Part shown: positions 15,764 to 25,410 of the stretch, in pieces
Position numbering within the stretch: position 1 is the stretch's first letter
Layout of the letters: each line of letters starts with the position of its first letter
Sequence record: PV400809.1
DNA length: 64,000 bases
Reading direction: 5' to 3' (one strand)
Translations under genes and position numbers: made by a program
The notes under the pieces: generated by a model
Database searches by the model: none
What the model was told of the DNA's origin: nothing
What the model saw: the letters and a program-made list of their open reading frames with translations, nothing else

Positions 15764-15860
15764 ATCGAATCGCTCTCTTTGGTTTACAGGGAAGTCATTA
15801 AAAAGGACTATTCTCCAATAGCCTGCTAATAATTTAGGTTTCAAATTATCTAGCGTAATC

Positions 15861-16062
15861 AAAAAAAAAAGACTAACGGGTGGGTAACCGCCGATATAAC
15901 CATAACACCACCCGTTAGCGCATCCAAGAGGATCAATAACGTTGTACCCTTACAGTGACCTAGAGAACCATGGCGTGGAAACAGGTCACTTTAACGGTAT
16001 AAGATATTCCCTCCTGGGTAAATAAAAAACAAAAGAAGTAAGACCTCCAGCTCTACATCATA
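15861..16062 (-). ncRNA. Candidate small RNA or attenuator upstream of phuZ
   Basis: No convincing ORF; AGTGACCT/AGGTCACT hairpin; 11-bp terminal stem CTAACGGGTGG/CCACCCGTTAG plus T10; early-promoter-like motif just upstream. Confidence 0.45.
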
Positions 16063-16080
16063 GTGACATAGAGCTGGAGG
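16044..16080 (-). terminator. Terminator hairpin overlapping an early-promoter-like motif
   Basis: 12-bp stem CCTCCAGCTCTA/TAGAGCTGGAGG, then TCTTACTTCTTTTGTTTTTTATT; contains CTCCAGC-TCTATGTCAC. Confidence 0.65.
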
Positions 16081-16271
16081 GGCGGAGCGTTTTGTAGGCA
16101 ACCCTCTCAAGCCTGACAGAATAGGCTTGGGCAGTTGAGGGGTGGTGGGTGTCTAACACTCCTAACCTTCCCACCAGGACCGGCGATGGAGTGAATGCAG
16201 GTCATCGGCATAAAATACCTGCACACTGTGGTTTCCATCGCCTACATTCTGAGTGTCTTACCCCCTAGGGA
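16081..16271 (-). ncRNA. Candidate structured RNA or long structured 3' UTR of the peptidase gene
   Basis: Consecutive stems GGCGATGGA/TCCATCGCC (with inner GCAGGT/ACCTGC), GGTGG/CCACC and CAAGCCT/AGGCTTG. Confidence 0.35.
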
Positions 16272-16820
16272 TTATTTTTCTGCCTTATCAGCGACCGGTT
16301 CAGGGCGCTTACTGGGGGTTGCTGGAATAGAAGGGAGTTCCCAGGTCTCAATACGACCACCGGAATAGACATCCAGCTTACAGGCCGCTTTAACTGCATC
16401 CACCGCGCTTTTACCAACCGCCATCACCGCACTGGCGTAAACGCTCCCTGATCCAATCGCAAACGGGGGTTGTACGCCCGACACCGTGAAAGCCATACTC
16501 CCGTCTCGTTGTTTATATGCTGAAACCATCCAAACATTACCCTGTTCACCCACACAGAGCAGATTCGAATCCCCAACGAGGTGGTCGGGTGCTTTGGTCT
16601 TAAAGGTAACACCCTCACTCAACAGTTCTTTAAAGGCCAACAGATCCGTCAGACTCCCCGACAAACCAAAACAGATAATACGGTCACCGTTGACACTCCA
16701 GTACTCTTCTTCCCCCGGTTCGTGGATTTTACGTTGCTCTCCGAGGTTGATCATATCGGCCCCGTTGACCACACGGGTATCCGCTGCCATTACACCGTCA
16801 CGATAAGCAATCGTTGTCAT
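16272..16820 (-). CDS. Ntn-hydrolase peptidase (HslV/proteasome beta-like)
   Basis: M-TTIAY N-terminus giving Thr1, plus AADT, GSGS and DVYSGG motifs. Confidence 0.85.
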   Translation of the reverse strand: MTTIAYRDGVMAADTRVVNGADMINLGEQRKIHEPGEEEYWSVNGDRIICFGLSGSLTDLLAFKELLSEGVTFKTKAPDHLVGDSNLLCVGEQGNVWMVSAYKQRDGSMAFTVSGVQPPFAIGSGSVYASAVMAVGKSAVDAVKAACKLDVYSGGRIETWELPSIPATPSKRPEPVADKAEK

Positions 16821-16892
16821 TACACACTCTTCCTCTTCTGGGTTTAACAAAACATATCAATACGAATAACCGTATTCTTTCATTACCCAATG

Positions 16893-16909
16893 ATAATGTA
16901 GAACTGAAA
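16893..16909 (-). promoter_or_regulatory. Early promoter candidate
   Basis: TTTCAGT-TCTACATTAT; 14/17 identical to the motif at 40681-40697. Confidence 0.5.
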
Positions 16910-16920
16910 TCCATTAACCT

Positions 16921-17446
16921 TAATTGCAATATTGCAGTATAAACCCTATACGCCGGCTTCCCTGTTCGGGAATGCCGGTCGGGGTAATTAACTTTGAAAG
17001 GGGTACTTCTTTAAGAGTAAATGAAATTTAGGGAATATTTAAAAGGTATTTTTCCCATTTTCATTTCCTCTTCATTTTTCCTTTTTTAAATAAAAAAGTA
17101 ATTTCCTATAATAATAATAAATAGTAAAGTTAAATTTTATTGCCTTATAAGCCCCTCCGGGGCTTATATAAAGAGCAAAAGCTATTACGGAGTAATAGGT
17201 TTTTCCTTCGGATTTTCTCTTTTCTCTTCTCTGGACTCTACCTTCGGTAGGGCCTCCTCCCCCAAGATTCTTTACTCCTTCACTCCACTCGCCGTAGGCT
17301 CATGTCGCTCAGTCCTAAAGAATCTTACCCCCTCCTCCAAAATGAGAATTGAGTAAGTGGAACATATAATGGAAACCGAATAATGAATTACTGGAAGATG
17401 TTATGATTCCCTAATCCTAGTTAACGGGTTTATATAAACCCGTTAA
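16921..17446. other. AT-rich non-coding region with clustered inverted repeats; candidate replication origin
   Basis: No ORF; A/T tracts; hairpins at 17146-17168, 17182-17198, 17238-17250 and 17264-17326; perfect 26-bp palindrome at 17421-17446. Confidence 0.45.
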
Positions 17447-17471
17447 GGTTTGTCAGACGAGGTCACCTTAA

Positions 17472-18320
17472 ATGAATCCAGTAGACCATGCGATCAATCG
17501 TGTCGTAAGTGGCAGTGATATCGATGAGTACTTGTTGAAGCTCGCTTTTGAAACCCCCAATGCGAACTATGCGGGGAATTGGTATAACCTGGTTAACCAG
17601 ACAACCGTGGAACAGGGTATACGGGAGAAAGTGATTCACCGTATTGTTCTACCGGAATGTAACGTAGGGGGTGGGAAGACGGAGTTGTTGGATCTGGGAG
17701 GATCCATGATCCGTGATCGGGGGAATGGGTGTGTAGAGGTGAACGTACCGGAAGCGACGACTCGGGGTGCTAAGATCATCAGTGTGACAGAAGTCTACCT
17801 GGGGAGTATGAGTTCCGCAGTTGGTCAGTTAGGGGCCGGGGTGAATGAGAACACGATGTGTGGGTCCGGAGTACTGAATGACATGATGGATGGCTTACTG
17901 GGGGGATTGAGTTCTAACCGCAGTATGCCAGTCACGTTCACCAATGTCCATATGACCGGTAATAACTGCTTTGTGATCTTTGGGTTGAATGCGGGAACGT
18001 ATTCCATGAGTGCTAAAGTAATCTTGGAATACGATGAAGGGATGAGCAGTATTCACCCTCGTCATTACCGGCAGTTCGCAGAGCTCGTTGAATTGGCCGT
18101 TAAGGCGTATATTTACAAAACCTGTAGGCGACCTACCCAAGAGGCGGTTTATCGCTCAGGCGTTCCCCTAGACGCCATACGGGACGATATACAGGCCTAC
18201 AGTGACGCGTGGACCCAATACAAAGAGTATTTCAAGAACACCTGGATCAACTGCATGACGTGGTCGGATAAACAAGCCCGTATTGAAGCAATACGGATGG
18301 CAACACCACGTCGGAATTAA
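17472..18320 (+). CDS. Conserved hypothetical, probably virion protein
   Basis: 282-aa ORF with a GAGG RBS; terminase-block synteny. Confidence 0.7.
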   Translation: MNPVDHAINRVVSGSDIDEYLLKLAFETPNANYAGNWYNLVNQTTVEQGIREKVIHRIVLPECNVGGGKTELLDLGGSMIRDRGNGCVEVNVPEATTRGAKIISVTEVYLGSMSSAVGQLGAGVNENTMCGSGVLNDMMDGLLGGLSSNRSMPVTFTNVHMTGNNCFVIFGLNAGTYSMSAKVILEYDEGMSSIHPRHYRQFAELVELAVKAYIYKTCRRPTQEAVYRSGVPLDAIRDDIQAYSDAWTQYKEYFKNTWINCMTWSDKQARIEAIRMATPRRN

Positions 18321-23685: not shown

Positions 23686-25410
23686 TTAAGGAAATTCAAC
23701 CGTTACACCGGTAACGGCCAGTTGCTTCTCATCACCAGACGTTTGGCGTTCTACCCAACGAAGGAACCAGGTCTTGCCCTTCTGAAGTTCAATGTTGATG
23801 GTGTTGTTCTTATTCCAATCCGAGATCGGATACCGCCAGGAACGCCCGTCTTCATGAACCAGGTAGAAATGAGTGGGTAAAGGAGCTTTCTCTTCATCGA
23901 ACCGATTGAAGCTAGGTTCGACCCCCCAATACAACGCTTTCAGCCAATCCGTTTGATTACCGTACCCGTTGGCCACATTGACCGTGGTAGCGACTCCGGA
24001 GTTCTTAGCGACAATGAACTTCGCTTCGTACGACGGTTTATTCTGCGAGAAGGACACGTCAAAGCGTTTACCCGGCCCATTGATGTCTTTATACAACACA
24101 ATGGTGGTGTACTGCCGGAAGATCACACTCTCGTACTGACTCGATACATCCCTCAAGTTCAAGTTAAAGATCAAAGATTGAGCAACCCCGTAGGCGGAAG
24201 GCCGCCAGACTTCACTCTTCTCATTGAACTTCACTTGAGCGGTCACATCAATGGCTGTTTTCCGATCCAGATCCAACAGCCAATGTTGGAGTCGATACCC
24301 CGAAATACTCGGATCCCATTGCGGGAAGGTGTAGATCTTCGGCGAGTAAGCGCCTTTAACAGGACCGGCTTCTACCGAATAGGTTCGACTGATATGATCA
24401 GGACTCCCGGGTTTGGCAATGTAATGCTGTTCATTCGCTGCCAGTTTAAGGGTCAGAACGATCTCACCCTCTTGACCCGGCCAGGTGGGACGCCATTCAT
24501 TCAACCCATACAGGTTGAACCGTTCGCCGTTCACCGGCATGGGCGCACTGGTGCTGCCGTCTGAGTAATGAATCACCGCCCTGAACTCAATAGCCGTTAC
24601 CAATACGTTCACCGGAATGATAATCTTCTCCGTATTGAGCGTGTTGGTAAACCACGGTGTGAGCAGTTCAATCTCCGTGACATACTTGGTACCAATCTGG
24701 TGATCCCGCATGTACGCACAGTGCTGGACCATTACAGGTTGAACCGGGGGAATGAAGTTACCCCCCTCGTCATAGAACACCAACGTACAACGTGTACCGT
24801 CTTTCAGGGCTTCCTCGTTCTCCGTGACACTGAAAGGACCCGTGGTCATAATCTCCAGGTTCGTACGATCTACGATCTCAGCCAACTTGGTAGGTACCTT
24901 GTTGCTGATCATATTCGCCGACTTGTCGTACTGAGCACTGATGATCCGACCGTTATCACTGGCGTCGTTACCGAGGTAGAGTTTAGCGTACGCTGCACCG
25001 GGTCGCATGATGGTGCTGTCAACGCGCGCCACGTTAGGCCGTTGACTGTAGTCCACACTCAGCAAGGCTTCACCCAGCAGAGGACCCCCTCGTAGACCGA
25101 AGATCCAGTCTTGTTCAGTCGTAGTACCGTCCTCACTGGTCCGAGGTTCCCACGGGACCAAGGTAGACTTCAAGGTCTTCCCCTGATAATCCACATGAAT
25201 CACCTCCAGGAACTGTTTATTAGGTACATCAATCACCAATTCCCGTTCCCGGGGGACTACGTACTTAACAATGTCCTCCGGCGGATGCTTGTCCGGATCA
25301 TAGATGTCAGGCAGGTAATGGATCCTGTACCGTTGGCCGTCATTCTCAGGAGCCAAATCAGTACCCGCCACCGCTCGCTCAGCACTCGTGCTGGGTTTGT
25401 TGTCAAACAT
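23686..25410 (-). CDS. Virion structural protein, baseplate-like (phiKZ gp26 position)
   Basis: 574-aa beta-rich ORF; synteny between terminase and sheath. Confidence 0.6.
   Translation of the reverse strand: MFDNKPSTSAERAVAGTDLAPENDGQRYRIHYLPDIYDPDKHPPEDIVKYVVPRERELVIDVPNKQFLEVIHVDYQGKTLKSTLVPWEPRTSEDGTTTEQDWIFGLRGGPLLGEALLSVDYSQRPNVARVDSTIMRPGAAYAKLYLGNDASDNGRIISAQYDKSANMISNKVPTKLAEIVDRTNLEIMTTGPFSVTENEEALKDGTRCTLVFYDEGGNFIPPVQPVMVQHCAYMRDHQIGTKYVTEIELLTPWFTNTLNTEKIIIPVNVLVTAIEFRAVIHYSDGSTSAPMPVNGERFNLYGLNEWRPTWPGQEGEIVLTLKLAANEQHYIAKPGSPDHISRTYSVEAGPVKGAYSPKIYTFPQWDPSISGYRLQHWLLDLDRKTAIDVTAQVKFNEKSEVWRPSAYGVAQSLIFNLNLRDVSSQYESVIFRQYTTIVLYKDINGPGKRFDVSFSQNKPSYEAKFIVAKNSGVATTVNVANGYGNQTDWLKALYWGVEPSFNRFDEEKAPLPTHFYLVHEDGRSWRYPISDWNKNNTINIELQKGKTWFLRWVERQTSGDEKQLAVTGVTVEFP

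What the first reader, a model, noticed from the sequence alone, without database searches (positions are those of the whole stretch)
17040..17340. Cluster of C-GNA-G triloop hairpins beside an AT-rich tract: candidate replication origin or ssDNA signal
Seen: within 155 bp there are five inverted repeats with 3-nt loops, and each reads C-GNA-G on one strand: 17146-17168 (10 bp, GGA, minus), 17182-17198 (7 bp, GGA, plus), 17204-17212 (3 bp, GAA, minus), 17238-17250 (5 bp, GAA, minus) and 17291-17299 (3 bp, GTA, plus, inside an 11-bp stem at 17264-17326 flanked by CCTCCTCC). They follow about 100 bp of A/T tracts in the largest non-coding gap. Established: d(C-GNA-G) triloops are unusually stable in DNA specifically, and N4 virion RNAP promoters use such hairpins. 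Inference: a cruciform or ssDNA element for origin firing, priming, packaging or nuclear-shell tethering.
Basis: partly seen in the sequence, partly recalled or inferred. Interest (0 to 1): 0.68.

Follow-up and report, generated by a model that had tools for sequence, protein, structure and literature searches.

The report
Conserved hairpin and AT-rich non-coding module
The largest gene-free gap of a giant Pseudomonas phage (an EL-like, nucleus-forming phage) holds a unique, strictly conserved block of small DNA hairpins next to the genome's most A/T-rich stretch and a phage promoter that points into it, which makes it the best candidate so far for this phage family's unknown replication start site, or else a new small RNA gene.

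Summary
The window is Pseudomonas phage vB_PaeM_GXNNE2, an Elvirus 97% identical to phage EL. All five C-GNA-G triloop hairpins are at the stated coordinates (0 of 5000 dinucleotide shuffles reach five), and no other 165-bp stretch of the 210-kb genome has more than two. They lie in the largest intergenic region, beside the genome's lowest-GC 100-mer.

New findings:
- Positions 17125-17351 form the longest invariant run in an 8.5-kb alignment of six isolates.
- In metagenomic relatives the stems covary while the loops stay C-GNA-G on one strand or the other.
- The 63-nt "rod" is flanked by mirror-repeat C-rich arms that covary in mirror fashion.
- A phiKZ-type TATG promoter motif on the minus strand (17370-17363) points into the cluster and is kept in 6 of 7 lineages.
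- The AT tract is the AT-richest site of the whole genome in several relatives too.

Best reading (about 0.38): a transcription-coupled replication origin or unwinding module, laid out as promoter, G-rich structured RNA, hairpins, then an unwinding tract. Main rival (about 0.30): a stand-alone minus-strand non-coding RNA of about 220 nt. There is no expression or replication data, no GC-skew signal and no Rfam match. The N4-promoter analogy is not supported.

The parts
16892..16910 (-). Class I phage promoter motif for the HslV-like gene gp015. It is the same motif that GenBank annotates as 'putative phage promoter' upstream of phuZ in EL.
   Evidence: PWM score is 24. There are about 20 copies in the genome, all on the minus strand and mostly 20-95 nt upstream of genes.
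16954..16983 (.). Imperfect GC-rich hairpin (H0), present only in the EL lineage
   Evidence: It appears as an insertion relative to the relatives in alignment A1.
17024..17150 (.). A/T-rich tract with roughly phased A/T runs; candidate DNA unwinding element
   Evidence: It holds the lowest-GC 100-mer of the 210-kb genome and is the longest AT-rich stretch. The orthologous tract is the only or top AT-rich site genome-wide in G002, G004, G006 and G007.
17125..17351 (.). Invariant core: no substitution or indel among six Elvirus isolates
   Evidence: It is the longest invariant run (227 bp) in an 8.5-kb alignment in which 4-7% of columns vary.
17146..17168 (.). H1: 10-bp hairpin with loop GGA on the minus strand. 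It is terminator-like when read on the minus strand (GC stem followed by TTAT).
   Evidence: Orthologues in L009, L037, L018 and L034 have different stems but always a C-TNC-G loop on the plus strand.
17177..17203 (.). H2: 7-bp (extended 11-bp) hairpin with loop GGA on the plus strand, followed by a T-run
   Evidence: A paralogue with the same loop and CT-rich tail lies in the genome's IGR 77800-78115.
17204..17212 (.). H3: 3-bp mini-hairpin with loop GAA on the minus strand
17213..17233 (.). CT-only tract. It is part of the second most pyrimidine-rich 120-mer of the genome.
17238..17250 (.). H4: 5-bp hairpin with loop GAA on the minus strand (the L027 orthologue has GTA on the minus strand)
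17253..17263 (.). Left C-rich arm, a mirror repeat of the right arm
   Evidence: one of only two homopurine/homopyrimidine mirror repeats in the genome. Mirror covariation is seen in L027 and L034.
17264..17326 (.). The 'rod': 11-bp outer stem, large pyrimidine-rich internal loops, and a 3-bp apex with a GTA triloop (17291-17299)
   Evidence: Of the cells, 90.8% are paired against 61% in shuffles, and 14 of 16 pairs show changes on both sides. It is single-copy in the genome.
17328..17338 (.). Right C-rich arm (mirror repeat of 17253-17263)
17363..17370 (-). Class II (phiKZ late-type ATnnTATG) promoter motif pointing leftwards into the rod; predicted start site is the G at 17363
   Evidence: 17 of 30 genome copies of the motif lie in the 7% of the genome that is intergenic. 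The same box sits 23-31 nt right of the rod in 6 of 7 lineages. TATG with G as the start site is from PMC4666361.
17135..17363 (-). Predicted minus-strand non-coding transcript of about 220 nt, running from the TATG start to just past H1. This is inferred, not observed.
   Evidence: The promoter, the H1 boundary and the invariant block coincide. There is no conserved ORF. Minus-strand RNA fold z = -2.7.
17398..17405 (+). Class II (TATG) promoter of the DUF7484 gene gp014, back to back with the minus-strand one
   Evidence: It is conserved in all relatives about 55-75 nt upstream of the start codon.
17421..17446 (+). 26-nt perfect palindrome in the predicted 5' leader of gp014. It is variable among isolates and is not part of the conserved core.

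Best explanation
The region is a cis-acting, transcription-coupled replication-origin (DNA-unwinding) module. It lies between the divergent promoters of gp015 (minus strand) and gp014 (plus strand). A third promoter, a phiKZ late-type TATG box at 17370-17363 on the minus strand, fires leftwards. The nascent RNA is purine- and G-rich, with G-rich boxes at 17338-17328 and 17263-17253, and its template is C-rich; that configuration favours a persistent RNA:DNA hybrid. The transcript passes through the conserved rod and the small hairpins, ends or pauses at the GC-rich hairpin H1 (17168-17146), and so arrives at the genome's most easily melted tract (about 17150-17024). There the RNA, after processing by the phage's own RNase HI, would prime DNA synthesis, as in phage T7's primary origin, T4 oriF/oriG and ColE1. 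Negative supercoiling generated behind the two divergent gene promoters would help melt the AT tract. It would also help extrude the inverted repeats, whose d(C-GNA-G) loops make unusually stable single-strand hairpins. Shown here: the anatomy, its uniqueness in the genome, its conservation, covariation of the stems, the promoter motifs and the AT extreme. Inferred: that the promoter fires, that an R-loop forms, and that replication starts here.
For: - Uniqueness in the genome: largest intergenic region; lowest-GC 100-mer; the only cluster of C-GNA-G hairpins; second most pyrimidine-rich 120-mer; one of two homopurine mirror repeats; the rod is single-copy.
- Constraint: 17125-17351 is the longest invariant run among six isolates.
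- The AT extreme recurs at the orthologous locus. It is the only 40-mer with at least 37 A/T in the 238-kb genome G002 and the 227-kb genome G004. It is the only qualifying 32-mer in G006 and one of two in G007. The primary sequence there is not conserved, so it is composition that is kept.
- The loop type is kept on either strand. H1 orthologues read GGA, GTA or GAA on the minus strand. Rod apexes read GTA, GGA or GAA on the plus strand, and are inverted to TAC in two lineages. Overall 18 of 57 triloop hairpins in the intergenic regions are of this type, against 8 of 322 outside (Fisher p = 7.5e-11). An RNA from one strand does not explain conserved U-N-C loops.
- A TATG-type promoter points into the module and is conserved in 6 of 7 lineages. 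All three clades keep the order: promoter, G-rich box, hairpins, GC hairpin, AT tract, gp015 promoter.
- The genome has an RNase HI gene but no recognisable Toprim, DnaG or Prim-Pol primase domain.
- From general knowledge: the T7, T4 and ColE1 origins combine a promoter with a downstream AT-rich or unwinding region; AT-rich flanks promote cruciform extrusion; d(GCGAAGC)-type hairpins are exceptionally stable.
Against: - There is no functional data of any kind. The one read-laying run gave only contigs, and the metatranscriptome run X18 had contigs on the flanking genes but none on 16812-17415. That is weak evidence, and it also counts against transcription.
- Cumulative GC skew follows gene orientation and shows no turn here.
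- There are no iterons, no initiator-like or replication gene nearby, and the cultured relative RisingSun lacks the region at this locus.
- G003 has its AT extreme elsewhere and G005 has none.
- The covarying rod, with conserved internal loops and wobble pairs only on the minus strand (4 versus 0), is more typical of a functional RNA than of origin DNA.
- The absence of a primase rests on only three Pfam models.
- The hypothesis joins several unproven steps.
Confidence: 0.38

Rival explanations
1. A stand-alone, trans-acting or regulatory non-coding RNA gene on the minus strand. The TATG promoter at 17370-17363 makes a structured, purine-rich RNA of about 220 nt (G-rich box, rod, G-rich box, three or four small hairpins) that ends at H1, a phiKZ-style terminator (GC stem followed by TTAT). 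The AT tract would be only a termination or insulation zone ahead of the gp015 promoter. Its target is unknown.
For: - The promoter motif is enriched in intergenic DNA and conserved in position.
- The invariant block 17125-17351 matches the predicted transcript.
- The rod covaries strongly, and wobble cells are 4 G.U on the minus strand against 0 on the plus strand.
- The minus strand folds better than the plus strand (z -2.7 versus -1.9; consensus -16.7 versus -8.8 kcal/mol).
- H1 tails are A/U-rich on the minus strand in all lineages.
- No ORF is conserved.
- Intergenic small RNAs bounded by a promoter and a terminator are documented in phiKZ and 201phi2-1.
Against: - It does not explain why the AT tract is a conserved genome-wide extreme.
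- It does not explain why loops that read U-N-C in this RNA keep their outer bases while the middle base varies.
- No Rfam family matches, even at E up to 10.
- The rod is absent from the L010 and L011 clades, which nevertheless keep the large gap, hairpins and AT tract.
- No RNA contig covers the region.
- H1 lacks a U-run, and the standard terminator scan finds nothing.
- GGA motifs are not enriched beyond other purine triplets, so an RsmA-sponge role has no support.
Confidence: 0.3
2. A purely DNA-level structural element unrelated to initiation of replication. Possibilities are a packaging-initiation (pac) site, an anchoring or partition site, or a supercoil-sensitive cruciform/H-DNA switch that insulates or couples the divergent promoters.
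For: - The mirror-repeat homopyrimidine arms with mirror covariation are the classical H-DNA/triplex signature.
- The inverted repeats and AT flank lie in the negatively supercoiled zone between the divergent promoters.
- The terminase large-subunit gene is 2.7 kb away and phuZ 1 kb away.
- The loop type is kept on both strands.
Against: - No repeats of the kind that centromere or pac-binding proteins usually use are present.
- The 64-bp spacer between the mirror arms is far longer than in known H-DNA.
- Triplexes rich in protonated C are disfavoured at neutral pH.
- No genome ends or read pile-ups could be examined.
- The idea gives no role to the conserved inward-pointing promoter.
Confidence: 0.15
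3. A long structured leader or attenuator for gp015. Late transcription from the TATG box reads through the hairpins and the AT tract into the HslV-like gene, and the hairpins tune read-through or mRNA stability.
For: The minus-strand promoter lies 520 nt upstream of gp015 in the same orientation. Hairpins H1 and H0 lie between it and the gene. The order of elements is conserved across clades.
Against: gp015 has its own class I promoter 70 nt upstream of the start codon. A leader would not need the genome's AT extreme, the mirror arms or strand-independent loop types. The 100% conservation exceeds that of the gene it would regulate.
Confidence: 0.1
4. N4-like hairpin promoters: the triloop hairpins are extruded and read as promoters by a virion RNA polymerase.
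For: The stem lengths (5-7 bp) and 3-nt purine-containing loops of H2 and H4 resemble N4 early promoters (general knowledge).
Against: No T7/N4-type single-subunit RNAP domain is found in the genome (although the control genomes were uninformative). EL-type phages use multisubunit RNAPs with sequence-defined promoters. Genes are absent downstream of the hairpins. Genome-wide, this hairpin type is not associated with gene starts.
Confidence: 0.03

Closest known systems
Transcript-primed origins: phage T7 primary origin (promoters 1.1A/1.1B plus an AT-rich region), T4 oriF/oriG (middle promoter plus a downstream unwinding element, R-loop primer), and ColE1 RNA II
   Same: A phage-type promoter fires towards an AT-rich, easily melted tract a short distance downstream. 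The RNA is structured and G-rich over a C-rich template. An RNase H gene is present. The element is single-copy and lies in a large intergenic region.
   Different: No origin activity has been shown. The distance from promoter to AT tract (about 220 nt), the dense C-GNA-G hairpins and the mirror-repeat arms have no counterpart in T7 or T4. The polymerase would be a non-canonical multisubunit RNAP working inside a phage nucleus.
Intergenic small RNAs of phiKZ and 201phi2-1 found by ONT-cappable-seq
   Same: Same phage family. A promoter is followed within 70-250 nt by a hairpin terminator in an intergenic region, giving a structured, non-coding product.
   Different: No sequence or Rfam similarity. 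Expression of the element here is unproven. It is tied to a genome-extreme AT tract, and its loops are constrained on both strands.
d(GCGAAGC)-type GNA mini-hairpins and ssDNA priming signals (phage G4/phiX174 complementary-strand origins; N4 early promoters)
   Same: The loops are C-G-closed GNA triloops, the motif known to make DNA hairpins exceptionally stable, and several are clustered within about 150 nt.
   Different: Those systems act on single-stranded genomes or use a single-subunit virion RNAP. This is a dsDNA jumbo phage without such a polymerase. The loops occur on both strands.
H-DNA / polypurine mirror-repeat (reverse-Hoogsteen hairpin) motifs
   Same: A perfect 11-nt homopyrimidine mirror repeat whose two arms change together in relatives.
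   Different: The arms are separated by a 64-bp foldable spacer rather than a few bases. Formation has not been tested.

Membership tests
Transcript-primed replication origin (T7 / T4 oriF-oriG / ColE1 type) | A promoter directed towards the initiation zone | tested here: inconclusive
   An ATnnTATG motif at 17370-17363 on the minus strand points into the module. The motif is enriched in intergenic DNA (17 of 30 copies) and conserved in 6 of 7 lineages. Promoter activity was not measured.
Transcript-primed replication origin (T7 / T4 oriF-oriG / ColE1 type) | An AT-rich unwinding element downstream of the promoter | tested here: met
   17024-17150 contains the genome's lowest-GC 100-mer. The orthologous tract is the genome-wide AT extreme in G002, G004 and G006 and one of two in G007.
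Transcript-primed replication origin (T7 / T4 oriF-oriG / ColE1 type) | A persistent R-loop or RNA-to-DNA transition, and origin activity | not testable with these tools
   Only assembled contigs were available. GC skew is dominated by gene orientation.
Iteron-type phage or plasmid origin (lambda, P1, SPP1) | Multiple direct repeats for an initiator, with the initiator gene nearby | tested here: not met
   Only weak two-copy direct repeats were found. The neighbouring genes are HslV-like, DUF7484, a phrog of unknown function, and PhuZ.
N4 virion-RNAP hairpin promoters | A hairpin with a 5-7 bp stem and a 3-nt loop | tested here: met
   H2 (7 bp) and H4 (5 bp)
N4 virion-RNAP hairpin promoters | An N4/T7-type single-subunit RNA polymerase encoded by the phage | tested here: not met
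   PF00940 has no match in the whole genome. The control genomes cannot contain it either, so this is a weak negative. Phages of the phiKZ/EL type use multisubunit RNAPs.
phiKZ-type late (nvRNAP) promoter | A TATG motif whose G is the start site | tested here: inconclusive
   The motif is present on both strands (17363-17370 on the minus strand, 17398-17405 on the plus strand) and is enriched about 8-fold in intergenic DNA. The definition is from PMC4666361. That paper also shows TATG is necessary but not sufficient.
Any Rfam RNA family | A covariance-model match at or near the gathering score | tested here: not met
   The best matches score 12-20 bits with E = 1-7, far below the gathering scores.
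Canonical intrinsic terminator | A GC-rich hairpin followed by a U-run | tested here: not met
   The scan finds none in 16500-17800. H1 resembles the phiKZ hairpin-plus-TTAT type only at motif level.
H-DNA (intramolecular triplex) motif | A homopurine/homopyrimidine mirror repeat with a short spacer | tested here: inconclusive
   A perfect 11-nt mirror repeat that covaries in mirror fashion is present, but the spacer is 64 bp.
RsmA/CsrA-sponge small RNA (RsmY/RsmZ type) | Excess of GGA motifs in unpaired regions | tested here: not met
   GGA is no commoner than GAG or AGG in the purine-rich strand. Against composition shuffles p = 0.10 in the window, 0.37 in L034 and 0.03 in L018 (p = 0.004 in L009 and L037).

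The most novel reading that the evidence does not exclude
This is the first identifiable replication origin of a nucleus-forming jumbo phage. It would be an R-loop origin in which the phage's own non-virion multisubunit RNA polymerase, starting at a late-type TATG promoter, makes a G-rich primer RNA. Strand-independent d(C-GNA-G) mini-hairpins and a mirror-repeat triplex clamp would hold the duplex open next to the genome's most meltable tract.
Probability: 0.3. Interest if true: 0.82.

Novelty: new variant of a known kind. Interest (0 to 1): 0.62.

Why it matters
Where and how nucleus-forming jumbo phages (Chimalliviridae) start DNA replication is not known. A 2025 review of their biology does not mention an origin at all, and my paper searches found no mapped origin. 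These phages replicate inside a protein shell that excludes most host proteins, and this genome shows no recognisable primase, so the priming mechanism is an open question. The module described here is a single, sharply bounded, testable candidate of about 500 bp. If it is the origin, it would allow origin-plasmids and engineering tools for these phages. If it is instead a late non-coding RNA, it is a new, strongly constrained RNA family with an unusual mirror-repeat architecture. Either way, the conservation of a DNA-type loop motif on both strands is an unusual evolutionary signature.

Tried and rejected
- Rfam, both strands, E up to 10: nothing credible.
- tRNA/tmRNA scan: none.
- Sigma-70 and terminator consensus scans: no excess over shuffles. 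A TTTAAA-16-TATAAT match inside the AT tract was set aside because these phages do not depend on host RNAP.
- Cumulative GC skew: it follows gene strand, with no inflection at 141 kb.
- Public reads: four runs were laid. X15 and X16 cover everything evenly and look like DNA libraries. X18 and X19 have contigs only on coding flanks. No starts, ends or depth could be read.
- Small ORFs: some GenBank records annotate peptides of 34-36 aa inside the gap. The frames are not kept in L009 and the other relatives, so I rejected them.
- 20-nt exact match of 17172-17191 to a coding sequence at genome 56602-56621. The gene is accessory and absent from EL, PaBa1, MIZ-Pa99 and phiRU, so it was not pursued as an antisense target.
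- RsmA-sponge idea: GGA is not specifically enriched.
- UNCG-tetraloop reading of the plus-strand loops: its register is incompatible with the perfect 5-10 bp stems.
- 6S-like RNA: considered because of the bubble-in-a-rod shape, but there is no Rfam hit and the apical stem is only 3 bp.
- Class I promoter scan of the AT tract: no site on either strand.
- Cultured relative RisingSun: the gap is absent at this locus.
- Literature: no paper on an EL or phiKZ origin was found.

Full report
**Identity and setting.** The window is 100% identical to Pseudomonas phage vB_PaeM_GXNNE2 (PV400809.1, positions 124001-188000). It is about 97% identical to phage EL, genus Elvirus, family Chimalliviridae. 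The finding lies in the divergent gap between an HslV-family peptidase gene (EL gp015, window 16272-16820, minus strand) and a DUF7484 gene (EL gp014, 17472-18320, plus strand). In other chimalliviruses the DUF7484 gene is annotated as a virion structural protein. phuZ lies one gene to the left, and the terminase large-subunit gene 2.7 kb to the right. At 651 bp this is the largest unannotated gap of the genome.

**Check of the observation.**
- In dinucleotide-preserving shuffles of the 166-bp core the mean count of C-GNA-G triloop hairpins is 0.076. None of 5000 shuffles reaches the observed five.
- The complete 209.7-kb genome has 113 such hairpins, and no other 165-bp stretch has more than two.
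- The A/T tract to the left (about 17024-17150) holds the lowest-GC 100-mer of the genome (17% against 49%). It is much the longest of only 12 AT-rich stretches.
- The neighbouring 17200-17320 is the second most pyrimidine-rich 120-mer of the genome.

**Constraint within the species.** I aligned 8.5 kb from six Elvirus isolates that differ from the window by 2-5%. In this alignment 4-7% of columns vary. The longest run without any change is 17125-17351 (227 bp), which is exactly the hairpin cluster plus the long inverted repeat. The AT tract and the leader of gp014 do vary. A coding run of 217 bp is nearly as long, so this shows constraint comparable to the most conserved coding sequence. It is not a unique statistical outlier.

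**Distant relatives.** Using the gp014 protein as a handle I collected about 30 loci from IMG/VR and JGI metagenomes at 41-76% protein identity.
- Those at 65-76% identity keep a divergent gap of 450-660 bp. The primary sequence of the gap is almost unalignable.
- Five lineages (window, L009, L037, L018, L034) have an H1 orthologue directly after an AT-rich tract. Its stem sequence differs in each, but its loop always reads C-TNC-G on the plus strand, which is GGA, GTA or GAA on the minus strand.
- Across 14 lineage samples, 18 of 57 triloop hairpins with at least 4 bp inside the gap are of the C-GNA-G type, against 8 of 322 in the flanking DNA (odds ratio 18, p = 7.5e-11). The samples are not phylogenetically independent, so the p-value overstates the evidence. 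The stems differ, though, so this is not simple inheritance of one sequence.

**The rod and its arms.**
- The 63-nt inverted repeat 17264-17326 is a conserved fold. A covariance model built from six lineages finds it once per genome, and only in the window/L009/L018/L027/L037/L034/L008 group.
- On the model-fitted alignment 90.8% of cells pair, against 61% in shuffles and about 40% when partners are slid. Fourteen of the 16 pairs show changes on both sides.
- The apex loop reads GTA, GGA or GAA on the plus strand in five lineages. In two lineages it is the exact inversion, TAC.
- The rod is flanked by two 11-nt C-rich arms (17253-17263 and 17328-17338) that are mirror images of one another, not complements. 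In L027 both arms carry the same extra T, and in L034 both C-runs are one base longer. The mirror symmetry itself therefore covaries.
- Only two homopurine/homopyrimidine mirror repeats of this size exist in the genome.
- Mirror symmetry is what a pyrimidine-purine-pyrimidine triplex (H-DNA), or a purine reverse-Hoogsteen hairpin on the other strand, requires. A polar single-strand-binding protein would not require it. That reading is inference.

**Promoters.** Two motif classes emerge from the genome itself.
- Class I is a 19-mer that GenBank already marks as a putative promoter upstream of EL phuZ. It has about 20 strong copies, all on the minus strand and mostly 20-95 nt from a start codon. 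One copy (16910-16892) serves gp015.
- Class II is ATnnTATG. Seventeen of its 30 copies fall in the 7% of the genome that is intergenic. In phiKZ, TATG is the late promoter of the non-virion RNA polymerase, and its G is the start site (PMC4666361).
- One class II copy (17398-17405, plus strand) serves gp014 and is conserved in all relatives.
- A second copy sits back to back with it on the minus strand (17370-17363) and points into the rod, 520 nt from the next minus-strand gene. The same box lies 23-31 nt to the right of the rod in six of seven lineages.
- A minus-strand transcript from 17363 ending at H1 would be about 220 nt long and would match the invariant block.
- Read on the minus strand, H1 is a GC stem followed by TTAT-like A/U-rich sequence, the pattern reported for phiKZ terminators.
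- The only wobble-type cells in the rod alignment are G.U on the minus strand (4 versus 0). The minus strand also folds better.
- No ORF is conserved, and the short ORFs annotated in some records are not kept in relatives.

**The AT tract in other genomes.** I searched complete relatives for the densest A/T stretches.
- The orthologous tract is the only 40-mer with at least 37 A/T in G002 (238 kb) and in G004 (227 kb).
- It is the only qualifying 32-mer in G006 and one of two in G007.
- In G003 the extreme lies about 10 kb away, and G005 has none.

Composition is therefore conserved at this locus in at least three lineages, while the sequence is not.

**Interpretation.** Two readings explain most of the data.
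- An RNA-only reading explains the promoter, the boundaries, the covarying rod and the wobble asymmetry. It does not explain a conserved genome-extreme AT tract. Nor does it explain why loops that would read U-N-C in that RNA keep their outer bases while the middle base drifts.
- A DNA-only reading (cruciform plus unwinding element) explains the AT tract, the strand-independent loop type, the loop inversions and the mirror arms. It gives no role to the inward-pointing promoter.
- A transcript-coupled origin uses all of these features. A phage promoter sends a G-rich, structured RNA over a C-rich template towards the most meltable DNA of the genome, in the zone of negative supercoiling between two divergent gene promoters. 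This is the logic of the T7 primary origin, T4 oriF/oriG and ColE1 (general knowledge).
- The genome encodes RNase HI but no recognisable Toprim, DnaG or Prim-Pol domain. That is compatible with transcript priming, but it is weak evidence.
- I rank the transcript-coupled origin first at about 0.38. It chains several unproven steps and lacks any skew signal, iterons or replication genes nearby.
- The stand-alone RNA comes second at about 0.30.
- Other DNA-level roles get about 0.15, a leader or attenuator for gp015 about 0.10, and N4-like hairpin promoters about 0.03. For the last, no single-subunit RNAP gene was found.

**Limits.** No expression, end-mapping or copy-number data could be obtained. 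The single read-laying run returned contigs only, and the one metatranscriptome that holds the phage had contigs on the flanking genes but not on the gap. The promoter assignments are motif-level. Lineage counts are small (five to seven). The model-fitted alignment leans towards the structure it was built from.

**Novelty.** I found no description of this element, or of any origin in EL, phiKZ or other chimalliviruses. Origins with an unwinding element and phage small RNAs are both known kinds. The strand-independent GNA loop constraint and the covarying mirror arms are unusual enough to call this a new variant of a known kind.

Noticed in passing
window 15764-16271 (gap between phuZ and gp015); TATG box at 16216-16209, minus strand: This is a second large gap (about 500 bp). 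It holds an 'orphan' ATnnTATG promoter 354 nt upstream of phuZ, then several hairpins, then a strong hairpin followed by a T-run. It is another candidate non-coding transcript or attenuator, already flagged by the scan as s1-412557.
   Followed up: partly
genome PV400809.1 77800-78115 (L003:27800-28115), outside the window: This 316-bp gap contains a paralogue of H2 with its CT-rich tail (same C-GGA-G loop; local alignment z about 4.3; 2 of 300 shuffles reach the score). It also has its own AT-rich stretch and a GC hairpin. It is the fourth most pyrimidine-rich 120-mer of the genome.
   Followed up: partly
window 17172-17191 versus genome 56602-56621 (minus strand): A 20-nt exact match links the linker plus left arm of H2 to the coding sequence of an accessory gene (XRX14778.1). 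That gene is present only in GXNNE2/GXNNA8 and HHBS8_1/HHBS47_1 and is absent from EL. The match could be a recombination scar or chance.
   Followed up: partly
whole genome (L002-L006): Typical gene-end hairpins of this phage are long, perfect 12-18 bp stems with a C-rich 5' arm, a G-rich 3' arm and 4-6 nt loops. They are usually followed by TTAT/TATT rather than a U-run. This is a different class from the triloop hairpins of the finding.
   Followed up: no
whole genome: No Toprim_2, DnaG_N or Prim-Pol domain was detected in six-frame searches, while a canonical RNase HI gene is present at 24041-24457 next to the DNA ligase gene.
   Followed up: partly
L048/L053 (PV472050.1, phage MIZ-Pa99): The record's taxonomy line places it in Pantevenvirales/Straboviridae, although the sequence is 98% identical to phage EL, an Elvirus. 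This is probably a mis-filed taxonomy.
   Followed up: no
L052 (PQ516283.1, phage vB_PQ1): The same gap is 774 nt instead of 621 nt and matches in three pieces. The record is 184 kb with 488 features, which suggests assembly or duplication artefacts.
   Followed up: no
window 17421-17446: A 26-nt perfect palindrome lies in the predicted gp014 leader. It varies among isolates, with indels at its centre, unlike the invariant core next to it.
   Followed up: no
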